Below are positions 38,604 through 45,682 of a stretch of DNA of 64,000 nt, in pieces. The notes under the pieces are model-generated. The model was not told where the DNA came from. It saw only the letters and a program-made list of their open reading frames with translations, and made no database searches. Where the stretch lies: positions 62,001-126,000 of the IMG/VR virus record IMGVR_UViG_3300042473_001265. One strand, given 5' to 3'. Every line of letters begins with the position of its first letter. The first letter of the stretch is position 1. A program made the translations under genes and the position numbers.

Positions 38604-38656
38604 AAAATATTTATGGATTATAATTGTTGTTTGATATAAAAGATAAATAAATCATA

Positions 38657-38764
38657 ATGAATACCATTCACTCACTCTTGTCCTCTTTGTGTATCTCGAA
38701 CACAGGGCTATCTGCGTCTTTGAGACTAGAACAGTTCCGGATCCCGAATGGTTGGCACAGTTAA
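38657..38764 (+). CDS. leader peptide 1 (Ser/Leu-rich, 35 aa) of a putative tRNA-operon attenuator
   Basis: MNTIHSLLSSLCISNTGLSASLRLEQFRIPNGWHS: 7 Ser and 6 Leu; followed by a terminator. Confidence 0.7.
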   Translation: MNTIHSLLSSLCISNTGLSASLRLEQFRIPNGWHS

Positions 38765-38791
38765 AATAATTTAACAACCCAAACTTCAAGG

Positions 38792-38820
38792 ACCCTGGAA
38801 CTAAAAACTCCGGGGTTTTT
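38792..38820 (+). terminator. attenuator terminator 1
   Basis: ACCCTGGA-N9-TCCGGGGT plus T run; AGTTCC at 38733 can pair instead with GGAACT at 38797. Confidence 0.75.
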
Positions 38821-38845
38821 CATTATGCACTACAAGGAGAACTGT

Positions 38846-38898: not shown

Positions 38899-38927
38899 TT
38901 GACACAGATTGCTGACTGTGCTACAAT
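38899..38927 (+). promoter_or_regulatory. sigma70-type promoter of tRNA block 1
   Basis: TTGACA-N17-TACAAT. Confidence 0.75.
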
Positions 38928-38936
38928 AGACAATTG

Positions 38937-38984
38937 GCAACAAACGATCGAGTAGTTGCTGTACAGTTCATTAATATAAAATTT
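38937..38984 (+). promoter_or_regulatory. boxB-like hairpin plus boxA-like antitermination element
   Basis: GCAAC-AAACGATCGAGTA-GTTGC, then GTTCATTAATATAAAATTT; the same loop recurs at 42764. Confidence 0.5.
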
Positions 38985-41906: not shown

Positions 41907-42407
41907 ATGCAAACCATTAATCTTGTAAAAGTAAAACAATTCATAGAAGCACAAGGCCCAATGACTCGCATCTATTTGGGTTGCGACAGCGAACGAATCC
42001 GAATCAACAACGAATGGTGGGCCGATTACACACTGGCCATTGTGGTGCATATCAACGGCAACAGCGGATGCAAGATATTTGGCGAAGTGTGCCGCGAGCG
42101 TGACTATGATCAAAAAACTGCACGGCCCAGCATGCGACTGATGAACGAAGTGTACAAAGTTTCTGACATGTATCATCGGCTGGGCGAAGTGCTGAACGGC
42201 CGAGAAGTGGAAGTACACTTGGACATCAATCCAGACGAACGCCACGGATCCAGCTGTGTGATTGCACAGGCCATTGGCTATATAAAAGGAACCTGCAACA
42301 TAACACCATTGGTCAAACCCGAAGCGTTTGCTGCCAGTTATGCTGCGGATCGCTTCAAAGGATTGGCCACTGCACGACATCGTGTTCGAGTCAATGAACG
42401 AGTTTAG
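41907..42407 (+). CDS. RNase H-like YkuK/DUF458 family protein
   Basis: IYLGCDS, RLMNEVYK, EVHLDIN and AASYAAD pattern. Confidence 0.75.
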   Translation: MQTINLVKVKQFIEAQGPMTRIYLGCDSERIRINNEWWADYTLAIVVHINGNSGCKIFGEVCRERDYDQKTARPSMRLMNEVYKVSDMYHRLGEVLNGREVEVHLDINPDERHGSSCVIAQAIGYIKGTCNITPLVKPEAFAASYAADRFKGLATARHRVRVNERV

Positions 42408-42494
42408 GAAGTGTGGCTGAGTGGCCTAAGGCAGCTGATTACTAATCAGTCATATCGCAAGGTATCGTGGGTTCGAATCCTACCACTTCCGCCA
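42407..42494 (+). tRNA. tRNA-Ser with the rare anticodon ACT
   Basis: Ser-type long variable arm and G73; stem GCTGA/TCAGT with loop TTACTAA; CCA. Confidence 0.85.
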
Positions 42495-42500
42495 ATGTTA

Positions 42501-42526
42501 AAAAGGCTACTTTGATAGCCTTTTTT
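42501..42526 (+). terminator. intrinsic terminator after tRNA-Ser(ACT)
   Basis: AAAAGGCTA-ctttga-TAGCCTTTTTT. Confidence 0.7.
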
Positions 42527-42561
42527 CTTGACTTTTAAACAAAAGGCATATATAATACACT

Positions 42562-42660
42562 ATGATTACGCAAATCACATTCACTGCTAACAACACGCCG
42601 GCCATCTATGAGATAGCCTATGAGCGTGATTGTCCCAGGGGTCTTTGCCATTGTAGTTAA
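42562..42660 (+). CDS. leader peptide 2 (32 aa) of a putative tRNA-operon attenuator
   Basis: MITQITFTANNTPAIYEIAYERDCPRGLCHCS; TATAAT at 42549 suggests a near-leaderless start. Confidence 0.7.
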   Translation: MITQITFTANNTPAIYEIAYERDCPRGLCHCS

Positions 42661-42682
42661 CAAAAGTACTACATTCACAAAG

Positions 42683-42707
42683 ACCCGCTAACTAGGCGGG
42701 TTTTTTT
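42683..42707 (+). terminator. attenuator terminator 2
   Basis: ACCCGC-taactag-GCGGGT plus T6; GGGTCTTTG (42639) pairs perfectly with CAAAGACCC (42678), which overlaps the stem. Confidence 0.8.
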
Positions 42708-42717
42708 ATGGCGCTGG

Positions 42718-42746
42718 TAGACACAAAATCGCATCAGTGCTATAAT
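42718..42746 (+). promoter_or_regulatory. sigma70-type promoter of tRNA block 2
   Basis: TAGACA-N17-TATAAT. Confidence 0.65.
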
Positions 42747-42760
42747 ACACACATAACAGC

Positions 42761-42801
42761 AGCAAACGATCGAGTAGCTGAAGAGAATTCTTTAAAAATT
42801 T
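42761..42801 (+). promoter_or_regulatory. boxB-like hairpin plus boxA-like element
   Basis: AGC-AAACGATCGAGTA-GCT, then TTCTTTAAAAATTT resembling rrn boxA (TGCTCTTTAACAATTT). Confidence 0.55.
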
Positions 42802-42830
42802 ACTAATATTTTTTCTTGCTACGGCAAGAA

Positions 42831-42964
42831 ATTATATTGAAACACATTTTCAATCTGAATTGACAGATACAAACAACCAAGGGGAGCCGCTGGACTTGAG
42901 CCAGGTTCATCCTGAATTGACAGGAACAAGGTTGTAAGGGGAGCCGAGTGCGTTTCAATATAAT
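42831..42964 (+). ncRNA. inverted-repeat-bounded RNA cassette with an internal direct repeat
   Basis: ATTATATTGAAACAC...GCGTTTCAATATAAT arms; two CTGAATTGACAG...AAGGGGAGCCG units inside. Confidence 0.55.
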
Positions 42965-42970
42965 AAATTT

Positions 42971-43045
42971 GGAGCATTCGTCTATCGGTTAGGACAGTGG
43001 GTTTTCAGTCCACTAAGAGCGGTTCGACTCCGCTATGCTCTACCA
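42971..43045 (+). tRNA. tRNA-Glu(TTC)
   Basis: Loop TTTTCAG, CCA. Confidence 0.92.
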
Positions 43046-43052
43046 TGTTTTT

Positions 43053-43139
43053 GGATGTGTAGGAAAATTGGTAACCCCAGGAGACTGTAAATCTTCCGTC
43101 GTAATGGCATTGTTGGTTCAAGTCCAACCTCATCCACCA
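43053..43139 (+). tRNA. tRNA-Tyr(GTA)
   Basis: Loop CTGTAAA, variable arm, CCA. Confidence 0.93.
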
Positions 43140-43142
43140 AAT

Positions 43143-43370
43143 ATTTCTCGTCAGAGCCCTAATGCAAATCCTGTGGGCGATGAATTAACAAGGCTGCATA
43201 GATGCTTGCAGTATATTGTCGGTGAAGTTCCGACCGGGAAACGAAATCAAGTGGAAAGCAAGAGCCACAAAGTAAACACCGCCGGGTCAGAAAATGTGTC
43301 CGGGACGTATGGGTCGCGCAGCCTATACAAACAACGGTGGGGTAAGAGTCCTCATAACATTTTCACAAAT
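43143..43370 (+). ncRNA. unidentified multi-hairpin RNA candidate
   Basis: Hairpins GCCC/GGGC, CTGCA/TGCAG, GTCGG/CCGAC, GTGG/CCAC and CACCG/CGGTG between two tRNAs. Confidence 0.4.
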
Positions 43371-43373
43371 TTA

Positions 43374-43448
43374 GGTGCGTTCATATAACGGTCATTATCC
43401 TGGATTGTCTATCCAGAGACGGGAGTTCGACTCTCCCACGCATCGCCA
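43374..43448 (+). tRNA. tRNA-Asp(GTC)
   Basis: Loop TTGTCTA, G73, CCA. Confidence 0.92.
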
Positions 43449-43456
43449 AGTTAACA

Positions 43457-43533
43457 GGCCCTTAGCTCATGTTGGTTAGAGCAGCAGACTCATAATCTGT
43501 TGGTGCTGTGTTCGACTCACAGAGGGCCTACCA
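43457..43533 (+). tRNA. tRNA(CAT), probably Ile2 (lysidine type)
   Basis: Loop CTCATAA; GGCCCTT acceptor resembles E. coli ileX. Confidence 0.8.
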
Positions 43534-44246: not shown

Positions 44247-44336
44247 GCCAGCGAGACTTGGAGTCCGAGGGGTCTTATATGCCCTTTCCGCCAGATTAGC
44301 GGCTTTGAGAGAGTTCGATTCTCTCCGCTGGTACCA
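44247..44336 (+). tRNA. tRNA with anticodon TAT (nominal Ile), long variable arm and minimal D loop
   Basis: GCCAGCG/CGCTGGT-A-CCA; loop CTTATAT; CCGC/GCGG variable arm; D arm GACT-tgg-AGTC. Confidence 0.75.
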
Positions 44337-44582: not shown

Positions 44583-45476
44583 CCGGGGCAGTTTAATGTC
44601 CTACTAGGCAGCTTGCTGTCTAGTGAAGAATAACTGTGGTGACACAGCCAAAGGAGGTATGCCTACATAACTCCGCCAGCAACGGTTCGTTTAGACAAGC
44701 CTGCTCAGACTCGCGAGAGTCCCTTCACTGATAAGACCGGTGGAGGTAACAATGACGCTGGATGTTGTGGAAAGAACGTCGGCTTACCGGCCCGCAAGGG
44801 TAACCGGAGCAGATGGAAAGTAACAGGTGGTGCTGACTTCACAACAAAACCAGTCCAGTTAATTGGCATGAGAAAGGGTAGTGTATCGGTCCGAGGGGTT
44901 GCACCCAAGGGCTTGTATGCAGTTTGAGTGGTCAGTGGAGGCTGTCGAAAGGCGGGGTCAACACAGATCGCAAAAGACGTCTGAGTAGTTCGCAAGACAA
45001 AAGGAACGTGGTGTGTTGTATTGTGTAGAGCAAAACTTTATGCAGCAACTGAGTCAGCACATCGCAGTAGGTTCGTTATAGCTCAATTGGTAGAGCAACT
45101 CCCTGTTAAGGAGTAGGCAGACGGTTCAAATCCATCTAACTATTAAAAAGCAAAGACTGACTCGGTCGTATGTGAAAAGCATCTAATACTTGGCTCGCAA
45201 GAGAATCAAGTCAGACGTAACTCGCAAGGTGAAATCTGTTTATGCAGGAAGTTTCGTAACTGTTTAGCGACAGTGAATGGCTCTAAAGGTCAACGGGATA
45301 GAAAGCGTAGAATAGCATATGGCGACAAGACTACTGCCTGTCTTTAAAAACGGCGATGCTGGCAACAGACCAGGAAACCTGCAAGGGTCTTGGTGGAAGT
45401 CGGAAGAAAGCGGTCTCGCAAGGATCGTAATAATGTCCGAGGTGTTGTTGGGTAAGCATGTATTCTCAGTGCTCCA
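44583..45476 (+). ncRNA. large (about 0.9 kb) structured RNA, GOLLD-like
   Basis: No credible ORF; own promoter; many GCAA/GAAA tetraloop hairpins; tRNA-array location. The GAGTAG..GCAAG..AAAGGAACGTGGTGTGTTGTATT segment resembles GOLLD as I recall it. Confidence 0.6.
45072..45144 (+). pseudogene. degenerate tRNA-Asn(GTT) embedded in the large ncRNA
   Basis: D arm TAGCTCAATTGGTAGAGC, ACTCC-CTGTTAA-GGAGT and T-loop GGTTCAAATCC; broken acceptor stem, no CCA. Confidence 0.65.
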
Positions 45477-45646: not shown

Positions 45647-45675
45647 TTGACACAGAATGATAAATAACATACAAT
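45647..45675 (+). promoter_or_regulatory. sigma70-type promoter (with embedded ATAAATA) for leader 3
   Basis: TTGACA-N17-TACAAT. Confidence 0.75.
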
Positions 45676-45682
45676 AGGATTT

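What the first reader, a model, noticed from the sequence alone, without database searches (positions are those of the whole stretch)
42528..42707. Leader 2 has a Tyr-Glu-Ile(ATA)-Asp control cluster directly before a perfect antiterminator
Seen: ATC TAT GAG ATA GCC TAT GAG CGT GAT lies just 5' of GGGTCTTTG (42639). That segment is exactly complementary to CAAAGACCC (42678), which overlaps terminator ACCCGC/GCGGGT-T6. Downstream tRNAs are Glu, Tyr, Asp, the CAT (Ile2) tRNA and the TAT tRNA; the last two would read the rare ATA codon. Tyr, Glu and Asp are the residues missing from the control region of leader 3.
Basis: partly seen in the sequence, partly recalled or inferred. Interest (0 to 1): 0.85.

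Follow-up and report, generated by a model that had tools for sequence, protein, structure and literature searches.

The report
Leader-peptide attenuator before phage tRNA genes
A giant lake phage puts a tiny test gene, translated from the first base of its RNA, and a stop-or-go RNA switch in front of its Glu-Tyr-Asp tRNA genes, apparently so that slow reading of Glu, Tyr and Asp codons lets more of those tRNAs be made; this control principle is known from bacteria, but I found no report of it for tRNA genes.

Summary
A near-consensus promoter (42528-42556) is followed 5 nt later by an ATG that opens a 32-codon ORF (42562-42660). The ORF holds TAT GAG ATA GCC TAT GAG CGT GAT, then GGGTCTTTG, which is exactly complementary to CAAAGACCC. 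That segment overlaps the terminator (42679-42708).

The window is a ~340 kb uncultured jumbo phage. I recovered 24 distinct homologues of the element, and all lie upstream of tRNA-Glu. All keep the ATG 5-6 nt after the -10 box, and only that frame is open. All keep a stop 15-26 nt before the terminator and a second promoter after it.

The peptide diverges fast, but the Glu, Tyr and Asp codons stay, and stay as wobble-read codons: TAT 11:0, GAT 10:1, GAG 11:3 against 23% background. Leaders without Tyr codons occur where tRNA-Tyr has moved to another operon.

A sister leader (45683-45814) uses only amino acids whose tRNAs follow it (34/34, P=7e-5).

Best reading: a leaderless, ribosome-mediated attenuator that senses tRNA supply.

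Caveats:
- A strong promoter follows the terminator.
- The antiterminator shows no covariation.
- ATA is not rare.
- One relative is a counterexample.
- There is no experiment.

The parts
42500..42525 (+). Intrinsic terminator that closes the preceding unit (tRNA-Cys, tRNA-Gly, RNaseH-like ORF, tRNA-Ser). The leader therefore starts a new transcript.
   Evidence: Terminator scan: 10-pair stem plus T run. Conserved in L003.
42528..42556 (+). Promoter P1, TTGACT-17-TATAAT.
   Evidence: 11 of 12 consensus matches. The -35 box, the ATATATAAT block and the following ACT-ATG are conserved in all 24 homologues.
42562..42660 (+). Leaderless leader ORF of 32 codons. The ATG starts 5 nt after the -10 hexamer, so it lies at or next to the predicted transcription start, and there is no room for a Shine-Dalgarno site.
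   Evidence: Frame 0 is open in 24/24 homologues and the other two frames in 0/24. All indels are multiples of 3. The spacing is 5-6 nt in 24/24. No Pfam or PHROG match.
42570..42586 (+). Predicted region 1 (codons 3-9). It can pair with 42636-42648 when no ribosome is present.
   Evidence: Fold of the transcript prefix. The 1:2 plus 3:4 state is -42.1 kcal/mol against -39.8 for the 2:3 state. This is predicted only. Other clades use different partner sequences.
42607..42630 (+). Candidate control codons TAT GAG ATA GCC TAT GAG CGT GAT (Tyr16 Glu17 Ile18 Ala19 Tyr20 Glu21 Arg22 Asp23).
   Evidence: Glu17, Ala19, Tyr20, Glu21 and Asp23 keep their amino acid across the window's clade (as do Met1, Thr3, Asn11, Pro13, Gly27, Leu28 and Cys29), while 16, 18, 22 and 24 vary. 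Codon bias: TAT 11:0, GAT 10:1, GAG 11:3.
42639..42647 (+). Antiterminator 5' arm (region 2), GGGTCTTTG, inside codons 26-29.
   Evidence: The same nucleotides are read in a different frame in L117 (Arg-Val-Phe-Val instead of Gly-Leu-Cys), so the constraint is on the RNA.
42651..42673 (+). Apical stem TGTAGT/ACTACA. The stop codon (42658-42660) and the conserved AAAGTACTAC box lie in or beside its loop.
   Evidence: AAAGTACTAC is conserved in 23 of 24 homologues, though its pairing partner differs between clades.
42678..42686 (+). Antiterminator 3' arm (region 3), CAAAGACCC. It shares 8 nt with the terminator's 5' arm.
42679..42708 (+). Intrinsic terminator: stem AAAGACCCGC/GCGGGTTTTT with a T7 tract.
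   Evidence: It is the RNAalifold consensus of the 24 sequences: 10 pairs, 3 with compensatory changes, for example CCCTCC/GGAGGG and CCCTGC/GCAGGG.
42718..42746 (+). Promoter P2, TAGACA-17-TATAAT with an upstream TG, immediately after the terminator.
   Evidence: Conserved in all 24 homologues. Relatives without the leader have P2-like promoters alone before tRNA-Glu.
42760..42798 (+). Hairpin with conserved loop AAACGATCGAGTA (42760-42780), then TTCTTTAAAAA (42788-42798). This resembles an rrn boxB/boxA signal at the start of the tRNA transcript.
   Evidence: The same box follows the promoter at 38899-38927, with a covarying stem. The function is inferred.
42971..43533 (+). The downstream genes: tRNA-Glu(ttc) 42971-43045, tRNA-Tyr(gta) 43053-43139, tRNA-Asp(gtc) 43374-43448 and tRNA-Ile2-like (CAT) 43456-43533.
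   Evidence: ARAGORN and Rfam. The CAT tRNA matches E. coli tRNA-Ile.

Best explanation
This is a ribosome-mediated transcription attenuator that controls read-through from promoter P1 into the tRNA-Glu/Tyr/Asp(/Ile2) operon of a jumbo phage.

Proposed mechanism, step by step:
- Host sigma-70 RNA polymerase starts at or next to the A of the ATG. The RNA is therefore leaderless, and a ribosome can load as soon as the 5' end emerges (inferred from geometry).
- If decoding is fast, the ribosome reaches the stop codon. The stop lies inside the loop of the GGGTCTTTG:CAAAGACCC hairpin, and the ribosome covers the 5' arm. The terminator then forms and a roughly 146-nt RNA is released.
- If the ribosome lags at the wobble-read TAT, GAG and GAT codons (codons 16-23), the 5' arm stays free. 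These codons end 8-30 nt before that arm. The lag would reflect scarce usable tRNA-Tyr, -Glu or -Asp.
- The free arm pairs with CAAAGACCC and takes 8 nt of the terminator stem, so polymerase reads on.
- The result is a negative feedback loop on the supply of the very tRNAs encoded downstream.
- P2, just after the terminator, gives attenuation-independent basal expression.

Shown: the sequence elements, their conservation, the coding constraint, the codon bias and the synteny. Inferred: the transcription start, the translation, the switch and the signal.
For: (1) All elements are present and beyond chance.

(2) There are 24 distinct homologues from IMG/VR, plus about 11 more distinct leader sequences from metagenomes. 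All those with enough flanking DNA lie upstream of tRNA-Glu.

(3) The ATG lies 5-6 nt after the -10 box in 24/24. Only this frame is open (24/24 against 0/24 and 0/24). Indels come only in threes. The stop lies 15-26 nt before CAAAGACCC in every case.

(4) The peptide is not conserved as a protein would be. Amino-acid-changing columns outnumber synonymous-only ones, 18:5 and 11:4. In the window's clade Glu17, Ala19, Tyr20, Glu21 and Asp23 are among the 12 positions that keep their amino acid, while their neighbours 16, 18, 22 and 24 vary.

(5) The arm GGGTCTTTG is kept in a different reading frame in L117.

(6) Synonymous bias is confined to the operon's own amino acids: TAT 11:0 TAC (p=0.001), GAT 10:1 GAC (p=0.012), GAG 11:3 GAA against 23% background (p=1.7e-5). 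His, Asn, Phe, Cys, Lys and Gln show no bias, and the sister leader family shows none.

(7) Covariation with operon content:
- The L033/L129/L136 clade has a Glu-Asp operon, with tRNA-Tyr moved to the Trp cluster. Its leader 2 has no Tyr codon, and (seen in L033 and L129) its leader 3 has gained one.
- The largest clade has Arg(acg) and His tRNAs in the Glu operon. Its leader 2 has His and CGT codons within E-I-P-S-H-D-Y-R-E, and its leader 3 has none.
- In the window these two tRNAs lie in the Trp cluster, and leader 3 has 2 His and 5 Arg codons.

(8) The sister family (window 45683-45814) has the same architecture, with an antiterminator arm that covaries with the terminator arm. Its body uses only amino acids whose tRNAs follow it: 34/34 (P=7e-5), 33/33, 35/35, 37/37, 27/27.

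(9) The antiterminator duplex is significantly more stable than shuffles in six leader sequences (window, L003, L088, L116, L117, L081; p<=0.007).
Against: - A strong promoter, conserved in 24/24, sits right after the terminator. The tRNAs are therefore not dependent on read-through, and the regulatory gain may be modest.
- The antiterminator shows no compensatory change on the family alignment.
- In the largest clade it is only a 6-bp GCGGG:CCCGC pairing that is not better than shuffles (p about 0.1).
- In the window the two hairpins can coexist in shortened form. The centroid fold shows both.
- Leader 2 is not exclusive. Only 11 of 23 body residues are operon-cognate (P=0.046), and it holds many Thr, Ala, Gln and Pro codons whose tRNAs lie in other operons.
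- Counterexamples exist. L169 keeps Tyr codons although Glu and Asp tRNAs are adjacent and no tRNA-Tyr is seen in 4 kb. The L033 leader has His and Trp codons without those tRNAs in its operon.
- The covariation rests on about two independent events.
- Codon bias could partly reflect shared ancestry.
- The efficiency of leaderless translation in the unknown host is untested.
- There is no transcript or reporter data.
Confidence: 0.55

Rival explanations
1. It is a translation-coupled attenuator that reports general translation capacity after infection (ribosome availability, host shut-off, overall elongation rate) rather than the supply of specific tRNAs. Any slow decoding anywhere in the leader would raise read-through.
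For: Same architecture as the main model. Leader 2 contains many codons for tRNAs outside its operon. A region 1 that would restrict sensing to particular codons is only predicted, and it differs between clades.
Against: The synonymous bias is restricted to Tyr, Asp and Glu codons. Those residues are among the few that keep their amino acid. The Tyr and His/Arg covariation with operon content and the strict exclusivity of the sister leader all point to codon-specific sensing.
Confidence: 0.2
2. It is an independent small early gene. A leaderless mRNA with its own promoter and terminator encodes a roughly 30-residue peptide with a function of its own. It lies next to tRNA-Glu only through conserved gene order, and the hairpins merely stabilise the 3' end.
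For: The start, frame and stop are conserved in 24/24. P2 makes the tRNA operon self-sufficient. Within clades some peptide motifs persist, such as AYE.DC and SFEIPSHDY.
Against: Amino-acid-changing columns far outnumber synonymous ones. The C-terminal third differs completely between clades while RNA pairing to the terminator arm is kept, once in another frame. There is no Pfam or PHROG family. This model does not explain the codon bias, the link to operon content or the exclusivity of the sister leader.
Confidence: 0.12
3. It is a non-coding unit. One version is a promoter-proximal terminator module like lambda PR'-6S RNA-tR', read through only when a phage antiterminator modifies polymerase. 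Another is a roughly 146-nt small RNA with a trans function. In either case the ORF would be incidental.
For: A consensus promoter is followed after about 146 nt by a strong terminator. The promoter-proximal sequence is very highly conserved. The AAAGTACTAC box is conserved even where its pairing partner changes. Attenuator RNAs can double as trans-acting sRNAs (the rnTrpL papers listed).
Against: An incidental ORF would not stay open in 24/24 with the other frames closed in all, nor accept only 3n indels, nor keep its stop at a fixed distance from the terminator. A -10-like pause element after the start (TATGAT) is not conserved. Half of the homologues have TATGAA, which lacks the key final T. 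I did not look for a Q-like gene.
Confidence: 0.08

Closest known systems
Classical leader-peptide attenuators of enterobacterial amino-acid operons (trpL, hisL, leuL, thrL, pheL, ilvL)
   Same: A short ORF carries codons cognate to the regulated pathway. An intrinsic terminator lies between the ORF and the genes. An upstream segment inside the ORF's 3' end can pair with the terminator's 5' arm, and the stop codon is placed so that a finishing ribosome blocks that pairing. A possible 1:2 hairpin is predicted.
   Different: The regulated genes are tRNAs, not biosynthetic enzymes, so the loop would act on tRNA supply rather than amino-acid supply. The mRNA is leaderless (ATG 5-6 nt after the -10 box). 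The control codons are scattered single Tyr, Glu and Asp codons rather than runs. A strong promoter follows the terminator. The element sits in a phage. The Rfam Trp_leader model scores 28.6 bits against a gathering score of 41, and the aligned part is little more than the terminator.
pheST attenuator (pheM leader) of E. coli
   Same: From my own knowledge: this is leader-peptide attenuation applied to a component of the translation apparatus (Phe-tRNA synthetase), so it senses the charging state of one tRNA.
   Different: It controls a synthetase gene, not tRNA genes. It is Shine-Dalgarno-led, cellular and has a Phe-codon run. I did not compare the sequences.
T-box riboswitches
   Same: They share the same logical goal: a cis-acting leader that reads the state of a specific tRNA and switches between terminator and antiterminator.
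   Different: T-boxes bind the uncharged tRNA directly through a specifier codon and the T-box sequence, and need no translation. Nothing of the kind is present here. No T-box match appeared at E<=10 in 42400-43000.
Lambda PR'-6S RNA-tR' late-promoter module
   Same: A strong constitutive promoter makes a short terminated RNA just upstream of the genes it can feed.
   Different: The lambda RNA is non-coding and read-through needs Q protein loaded at a promoter-proximal pause. Here a conserved translated frame spans the RNA, and the pause-like hexamer is not conserved.
The sister element in the same window (leader 3, 45647-45868) and its 16 distinct relatives
   Same: It has the same build: a consensus promoter, an ATG 6-7 nt after the -10 box, a 36-48 codon ORF, an antiterminator arm in the last codons, the stop in the loop, and a terminator, all ahead of a tRNA operon.
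   Different: Leader 3 is a strict checklist of the amino acids of its 16-26 tRNA operon. Its antiterminator is stronger and covaries. In the relatives I read, no conserved promoter follows its terminator. Leader 2 is short-listed (Glu, Tyr, Asp, plus or minus His, Arg, Ile) and not exclusive.

Membership tests
Ribosome-mediated (leader-peptide) transcription attenuators | A short translated ORF lies upstream of the regulated genes on the same transcript. | tested here: inconclusive
   The ORF is conserved. Frame 0 is open in 24/24 and the other frames in 0/24, with 3n indels and a fixed stop position. Translation itself is not shown. It would have to be leaderless.
Ribosome-mediated (leader-peptide) transcription attenuators | An intrinsic terminator lies between the leader ORF and the regulated genes. 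| tested here: met
   Stem 42679-42705 plus a T7 tract. Conserved with 3 compensatory pairs across 24 sequences.
Ribosome-mediated (leader-peptide) transcription attenuators | An alternative antiterminator hairpin shares bases with the terminator. Its 5' arm lies within reach of a ribosome at the stop codon. | tested here: inconclusive
   Met in the window: 9 bp, 8 nt shared, arm ending 10 nt before the stop, p=0.007 against shuffles. Five further leader sequences also reach p<=0.003. It is weak in the largest clade (p about 0.1) and shows no compensatory changes. In the sister family it covaries.
Ribosome-mediated (leader-peptide) transcription attenuators | The regulatory codons are cognate to what the operon supplies. 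| tested here: met
   Glu, Tyr and Asp codons are present in all leaders whose operon has those tRNAs, and they keep their amino acid within the clade. Wobble-codon bias is confined to them. Tyr and His/Arg content tracks operon content. One counterexample, L169. There are no codon runs as in his or phe.
Ribosome-mediated (leader-peptide) transcription attenuators | A region 1:2 pairing enforces termination when the leader is not translated. | tested here: inconclusive
   Predicted in the window (42570-42586 with 42636-48; -42.1 against -39.8 kcal/mol) and, with different sequences, in other clades. Conservation could not be assessed.
Ribosome-mediated (leader-peptide) transcription attenuators | Read-through responds to translation of the leader. 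| not testable with these tools
   This needs reporter assays, Term-seq or coupled in vitro assays.
Rfam Trp_leader (RF00513) and other curated leader families | The score reaches the family's gathering threshold. | tested here: not met
   Trp_leader scores 28.6 bits against 41. Leu_leader scores 17.4 and Phe_leader 16.6. The aligned part is essentially the terminator.
T-box riboswitch | A specifier loop and a T-box antiterminator bulge are recognisable by the Rfam model. | tested here: not met
   No T-box hit at E<=10 in 42400-43000.
Q-type promoter-proximal antitermination module (lambda PR'/6S) | A conserved -10-like pause element in the initial transcribed region, and a non-coding short RNA. 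| tested here: not met
   TATGAT occurs in the window but TATGAA, TATGAAA and similar occur in half of the homologues. The short RNA carries a conserved open frame. I did not search for a Q-like gene.
Known small phage or bacterial protein families | A significant profile match of the 32-residue product. | tested here: not met
   No Pfam-A or PHROG family at E<=1.

The most novel reading that the evidence does not exclude
These jumbo phages run their tRNA arrays on demand. Each tRNA operon is preceded by a leaderless 'test translation' ORF written in the codons of that operon's own tRNAs. Shortage of any one of them then stalls the ribosome, opens an antiterminator and raises transcription of exactly the missing tRNAs. 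Such shortage could follow host codon-usage mismatch or cleavage by host anticodon nucleases. Leader 2 would be the Glu/Tyr/Asp channel of this system, leader 3 the 15-amino-acid channel, and leader 1 possibly the Ser/Arg/Leu channel. As far as I could find, this would be the first leader-peptide attenuation of tRNA genes, and a homeostatic layer of phage translation takeover or counter-defence.
Probability: 0.45. Interest if true: 0.92.

Novelty: new variant of a known kind. Interest (0 to 1): 0.85.

Why it matters
- Phage tRNA genes are usually treated as constitutively expressed cargo. How their expression is matched to need is an open question. It has gained weight now that phage tRNAs are known to replace host tRNAs destroyed by defence nucleases (my own knowledge).
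- A leader-peptide attenuator in front of tRNA genes would close a direct feedback loop. The sensor would be decoding speed at given codons, and the output would be the tRNAs that read them.
- The design is compact, uses host sigma-70 promoters, and is directly testable in E. coli reporters or defined cell-free systems.
- The leaderless start is an unusual way to guarantee that the first ribosome follows polymerase from the first nucleotide.
- The sister element offers a natural 'checklist' ORF whose composition can be predicted from the operon. That gives a simple rule for finding such sensors in other genomes.

Tried and rejected
- DNA similarity to cultured phages (INPHARED) found only tRNA matches and no relatives of the element.
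- RNAalifold on the 24 leaders returned only the terminator as consensus.
- A column-wise test of the window's antiterminator on that alignment gave no compensatory changes, and the slid controls did about as well. Covariation support for leader 2's antiterminator is therefore rejected. The support that remains is per-sequence energy against shuffles.
- The Rfam Trp_leader hit looked promising but is below threshold and is essentially terminator-only.
- 'ATA as rare control codon' is rejected on codon usage.
- I first took the L081/L256 leader as extra support (18 of 25 residues in the first 8 tRNAs' set). I withdrew this when the full locus showed an 18-tRNA merged operon, which makes the match uninformative.
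- Composition alone (Tyr+Glu+Asp = 5/32) is not above background.
- A sigma-dependent pause or Q-type reading is rejected because the -10-like hexamer is not conserved.
- A RiPP-precursor idea (Cys-rich C-terminus, radical SAM gene 4 kb away on the other strand) was dropped. The C-terminus is not conserved between clades, and its conserved nucleotides are explained by RNA pairing.
- Five literature searches found no prior description. The library lacks most subscription journals, so a precedent there is not excluded.
Full report
**Context.** The window carries 30 tRNA genes on the + strand between 39006 and 49369. It also carries a GOLLD RNA (45008-45472) and a permuted tmRNA. The neighbouring RNaseH-like gene (41907-42407) retrieved 80 related loci from IMG/VR. 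Two are identical to the window, and one of these lies on a 340,172-bp contig. Several others lie on contigs of 340-350 kb. The window is therefore part of an uncultured jumbo phage with many relatives. Cultured phages share only tRNA similarity with the region.

**The observation.**
- A terminator (42500-42525) ends the preceding unit.
- A promoter TTGACT-17-TATAAT (42528-42556) follows.
- The ATG at 42562 starts 5 nt after the -10 hexamer and opens a 32-codon frame ending at TAA 42658-42660.
- Codons 16-23 are TAT GAG ATA GCC TAT GAG CGT GAT.
- GGGTCTTTG (42639-42647, codons 26-29) is the exact complement of CAAAGACCC (42678-42686).
- The terminator stem AAAGACCCGC/GCGGGTTTTT (42679-42705) shares 8 nt with that segment.

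The 9+9 complement is unique in the window and absent from 100 shuffles. The duplex energy of -15.1 kcal/mol is reached by only 0.7% of shuffles. The whole leader folds better than its shuffles (z = -3.4).

First, the ATG is so close to the -10 box that the mRNA must be leaderless. Second, a strong extended -10 promoter (42718-42746) lies right after the terminator.

**Relatives.** A motif scan of IMG/VR followed by a profile search gave 24 distinct versions of the element.
- Wherever flanking DNA is available the element lies upstream of tRNA-Glu(ttc), although the order of the following tRNAs differs.
- All 24 keep P1, the ATG 5-6 nt after the -10 box, a 25-36 codon frame, a stop 15-26 nt before CAAA(G/A)ACCC, the terminator and P2.
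- The terminator has compensatory changes.
- The leader frame is open in 24/24 and the other two frames in 0/24. All indels are multiples of three.

So the frame is under selection. The peptide, however, is not conserved like a protein. Columns with amino-acid changes outnumber synonymous-only columns 18:5 in the window's clade and 11:4 in the largest clade. The C-terminal third is unrelated between clades, and no Pfam or PHROG family matches. In L117 the nucleotides GGGTCTTTG are retained but read in another frame. That part is therefore constrained as RNA.

**Are the Tyr, Glu and Asp codons special?** On composition alone they are not: 5 of 32 residues is the background rate. Three comparative results say they are.
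- In the window's clade (window, L003, L088, L107, L116), Glu17, Ala19, Tyr20, Glu21 and Asp23 are among the 12 positions that keep their amino acid (the others are Met1, Thr3, Asn11, Pro13, Gly27, Leu28 and Cys29). Positions 16, 18, 22 and 24 vary.
- Across one representative per clade, the codons for exactly these three amino acids are strongly biased to the form read by wobble by the downstream tRNAs. TAT is 11:0, GAT 10:1, and GAG 11:3 where the phage's genes use GAG for 23% of Glu codons (p=1.7e-5). His, Asn, Phe, Cys, Lys and Gln show no bias, and the sister leader family shows none.
- Leader content follows operon content.
  - In L033, L129 and L136 the operon is Glu-Asp and the leader has no Tyr codon. 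In L033 and L129 tRNA-Tyr sits in the next cluster, and the leader of that cluster has acquired a Tyr codon.
  - In the largest clade the Glu operon also holds tRNA-Arg(acg) and tRNA-His. Its leader reads E-I-P-S-H-D-Y-R-E with CAT and CGT, and the next leader has no His or Arg.
  - In the window those two tRNAs lie in the next cluster, whose leader has two His and five Arg codons.

These are about two independent evolutionary events, so they are suggestive rather than conclusive. L169 is a counterexample: Tyr codons are kept although no tRNA-Tyr lies nearby.

**The sister element.** A generic search of the loci for 'consensus promoter, ATG 4-8 nt later, short ORF, T-run' returned only two families: leader 2 and the family of the window's leader 3 (45647-45868).

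Leader 3 has the same build. Its antiterminator arm CAGGGTCC, in the last codons, pairs with the terminator arm GGACCCTG. The two arms covary across relatives as GGGTCC/GGACCC, GGGTTC/GAACCC, GGGTCT/AGACCC and GGGTTT/AAACCC.

Its body uses only amino acids whose tRNAs follow it:

| Locus | Body residues in the operon's set | P |
|---|---|---|
| window | 34/34 | 7e-5 |
| L024 | 33/33 | 7e-5 |
| L014 | 35/35 | 0.0015 |
| L028 | 37/37 | 0.0017 |
| largest clade | 27/27 | 0.004 |

In the window's leader 3 all 15 amino-acid types of the operon are used. Amino acids whose tRNAs lie only in the Glu operon appear in leader 3 only in its last few codons, within or beside the antiterminator arm. This is very hard to explain unless these ORFs are read as tRNA sensors, and it raises the prior for leader 2.

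**Mechanism (inferred).**
- Polymerase starts at the ATG and a ribosome loads on the 5'-terminal AUG.
- A ribosome that reaches the stop covers the 5' arm, whose last base lies 10 nt before the stop. The terminator then forms.
- A ribosome delayed at codons 16-21, and possibly up to 23, leaves the arm free. The arm captures CAAAGACCC and polymerase reads through into P2, the box hairpin and the tRNAs.
- Prefix folding also predicts a 1:2 pairing (42570-42586 with 42636-42648) that would give termination without translation. The energies are -42.1 against -39.8 kcal/mol. This pairing is not conserved in sequence, and I treat it as unproven.

**Weaknesses.**
- P2 is strong and universal, so attenuation can only modulate a basal level.
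- Relatives without any leader 2 drive tRNA-Glu from P2-like promoters alone.
- The antiterminator has no covariation support in this family and is weak in the largest clade.
- The centroid fold lets shortened versions of both hairpins coexist.
- Leader 2 also carries many non-cognate codons.
- ATA is neither rare nor positionally conserved, and the TAT 'tRNA' is doubtful. The CAT tRNA, by contrast, does look like tRNA-Ile2.

**Comparison with known systems.** The element works like the trp, his, phe and thr leader-peptide attenuators. It is not a member of any curated family. Trp_leader scores 28.6 bits against 41, aligned on the terminator only, and there is no T-box. It differs in target (tRNA genes), in being leaderless, in its scattered control codons, in the trailing promoter and in its phage setting. 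Five full-text searches found no description of leader-peptide attenuation of tRNA genes. The search library lacks most subscription journals.

**Verdict.**
- Best explanation: a leaderless ribosome-mediated attenuator that senses decoding of Tyr, Glu and Asp codons (confidence 0.55).
- Novelty: a new variant of a known kind.
- Interest: high.

Noticed in passing
window 45647-45868: Leader 3. A consensus promoter is followed 7 nt after the -10 box by an ATG opening a 43-codon ORF (45683-45814). Its first 37 residues use exactly the 15 amino-acid types of the 16 tRNAs at 47002-49369 and none of Leu, Tyr, Asp, Glu or Cys. The antiterminator CAGGGTCC/GGACCCTG is stronger than the terminator. The same rule holds in most of its 16 distinct relatives.
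   Followed up: yes
window 38631-38830: Leader 1. A 35-codon ORF (38657-38764) is rich in Ser, Leu and Arg (13 of 26 body residues, P=2.4e-4; codons TTG x3, CTA x2, AGA). It lies ahead of tRNA-Ser(tga), Arg(tct), Leu(caa), Leu(taa) and Leu(tag). Its terminator resembles that of leader 3. However, its ATG overlaps the best -10 match (CATAAT 38653-38658), so its start is unclear. It is conserved in L003.
   Followed up: partly
window 38939-38961 and 42760-42798: A hairpin with the conserved loop AAACGATCGAGTA and covarying stems (GCAAC/GTTGC against CAGC/GCTG) follows two tRNA-operon promoters. After P2 it is followed by TTCTTTAAAAA. Relative L015 has CGCTCTTTAACA at that place. The arrangement resembles an rrn-type boxB/boxA antitermination signal for untranslated tRNA operons.
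   Followed up: partly
window about 46060-46265: A conserved, apparently structured RNA, listed mechanically as ORF 46064-46225. It follows the leader-3 terminator and precedes tRNA-Trp in many relatives. It has no Rfam match at E<=1. In the window a 236-codon gene on the minus strand (46270-46980) is inserted between it and tRNA-Trp.
   Followed up: partly
window 48091-48723: Four long hairpins have nearly identical 17-20 bp stems (ACCATATAAAAACACA / TGTGTTTCTATATGGT). They enclose 65-91 nt each (48091-48195, 48245-48370, 48480-48592, 48599-48723) and lie between tRNA-Lys and tRNA-His. No family match. Function unknown.
   Followed up: partly
window 45008-45472: A GOLLD RNA (RF02032, 197 bits, full length) with tRNA-Asn (45071-45145) embedded in it. 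It lies at the end of the operon that leader 2 precedes.
   Followed up: no
window 49393-49676: A permuted tmRNA (RF04321, 89 bits) lies directly after tRNA-Pro at the end of the tRNA array.
   Followed up: no
window 42407-42494: A tRNA-Ser with the unusual anticodon ACT (A at position 34). It starts at the last base of the RNaseH-like ORF's stop codon (41907-42407). Both ARAGORN and Rfam detect it (51.8 bits).
   Followed up: no
window 44247-44336: A 90-nt 'tRNA-Ile(tat)' is called only by ARAGORN. Rfam gives a sub-threshold tRNA-Sec-like match (23 bits). Similar calls recur at the same relative place in several relatives, so it may be an atypical long-arm tRNA.
   Followed up: partly
window 42831-42964: Just before tRNA-Glu lie a 41-nt direct repeat (42849-42889 and 42906-42946, 76% identical) and a 16-nt inverted repeat that brackets it (42831-42846 with 42949-42964).
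   Followed up: no
window 50186-51088: A 300-residue Gram-negative porin gene (Porin_4, E=4e-26) lies on a phage contig. It is preceded by an 80-residue Ala/Lys/Pro-repeat ORF (49835-50077).
   Followed up: no
L169 2244-2398: This metagenome relative has tRNA-Glu and tRNA-Asp only 5 nt apart and no tRNA-Tyr in 4.1 kb. Its leader still carries Tyr codons. It is a counterexample, or a recent loss.
   Followed up: partly
L025 4189 and L111 4704: ARAGORN calls a tRNA with anticodon CTA (labelled Pyl, that is, an amber suppressor-type tRNA) inside or near the Glu-Tyr-Asp operon of some relatives.
   Followed up: no
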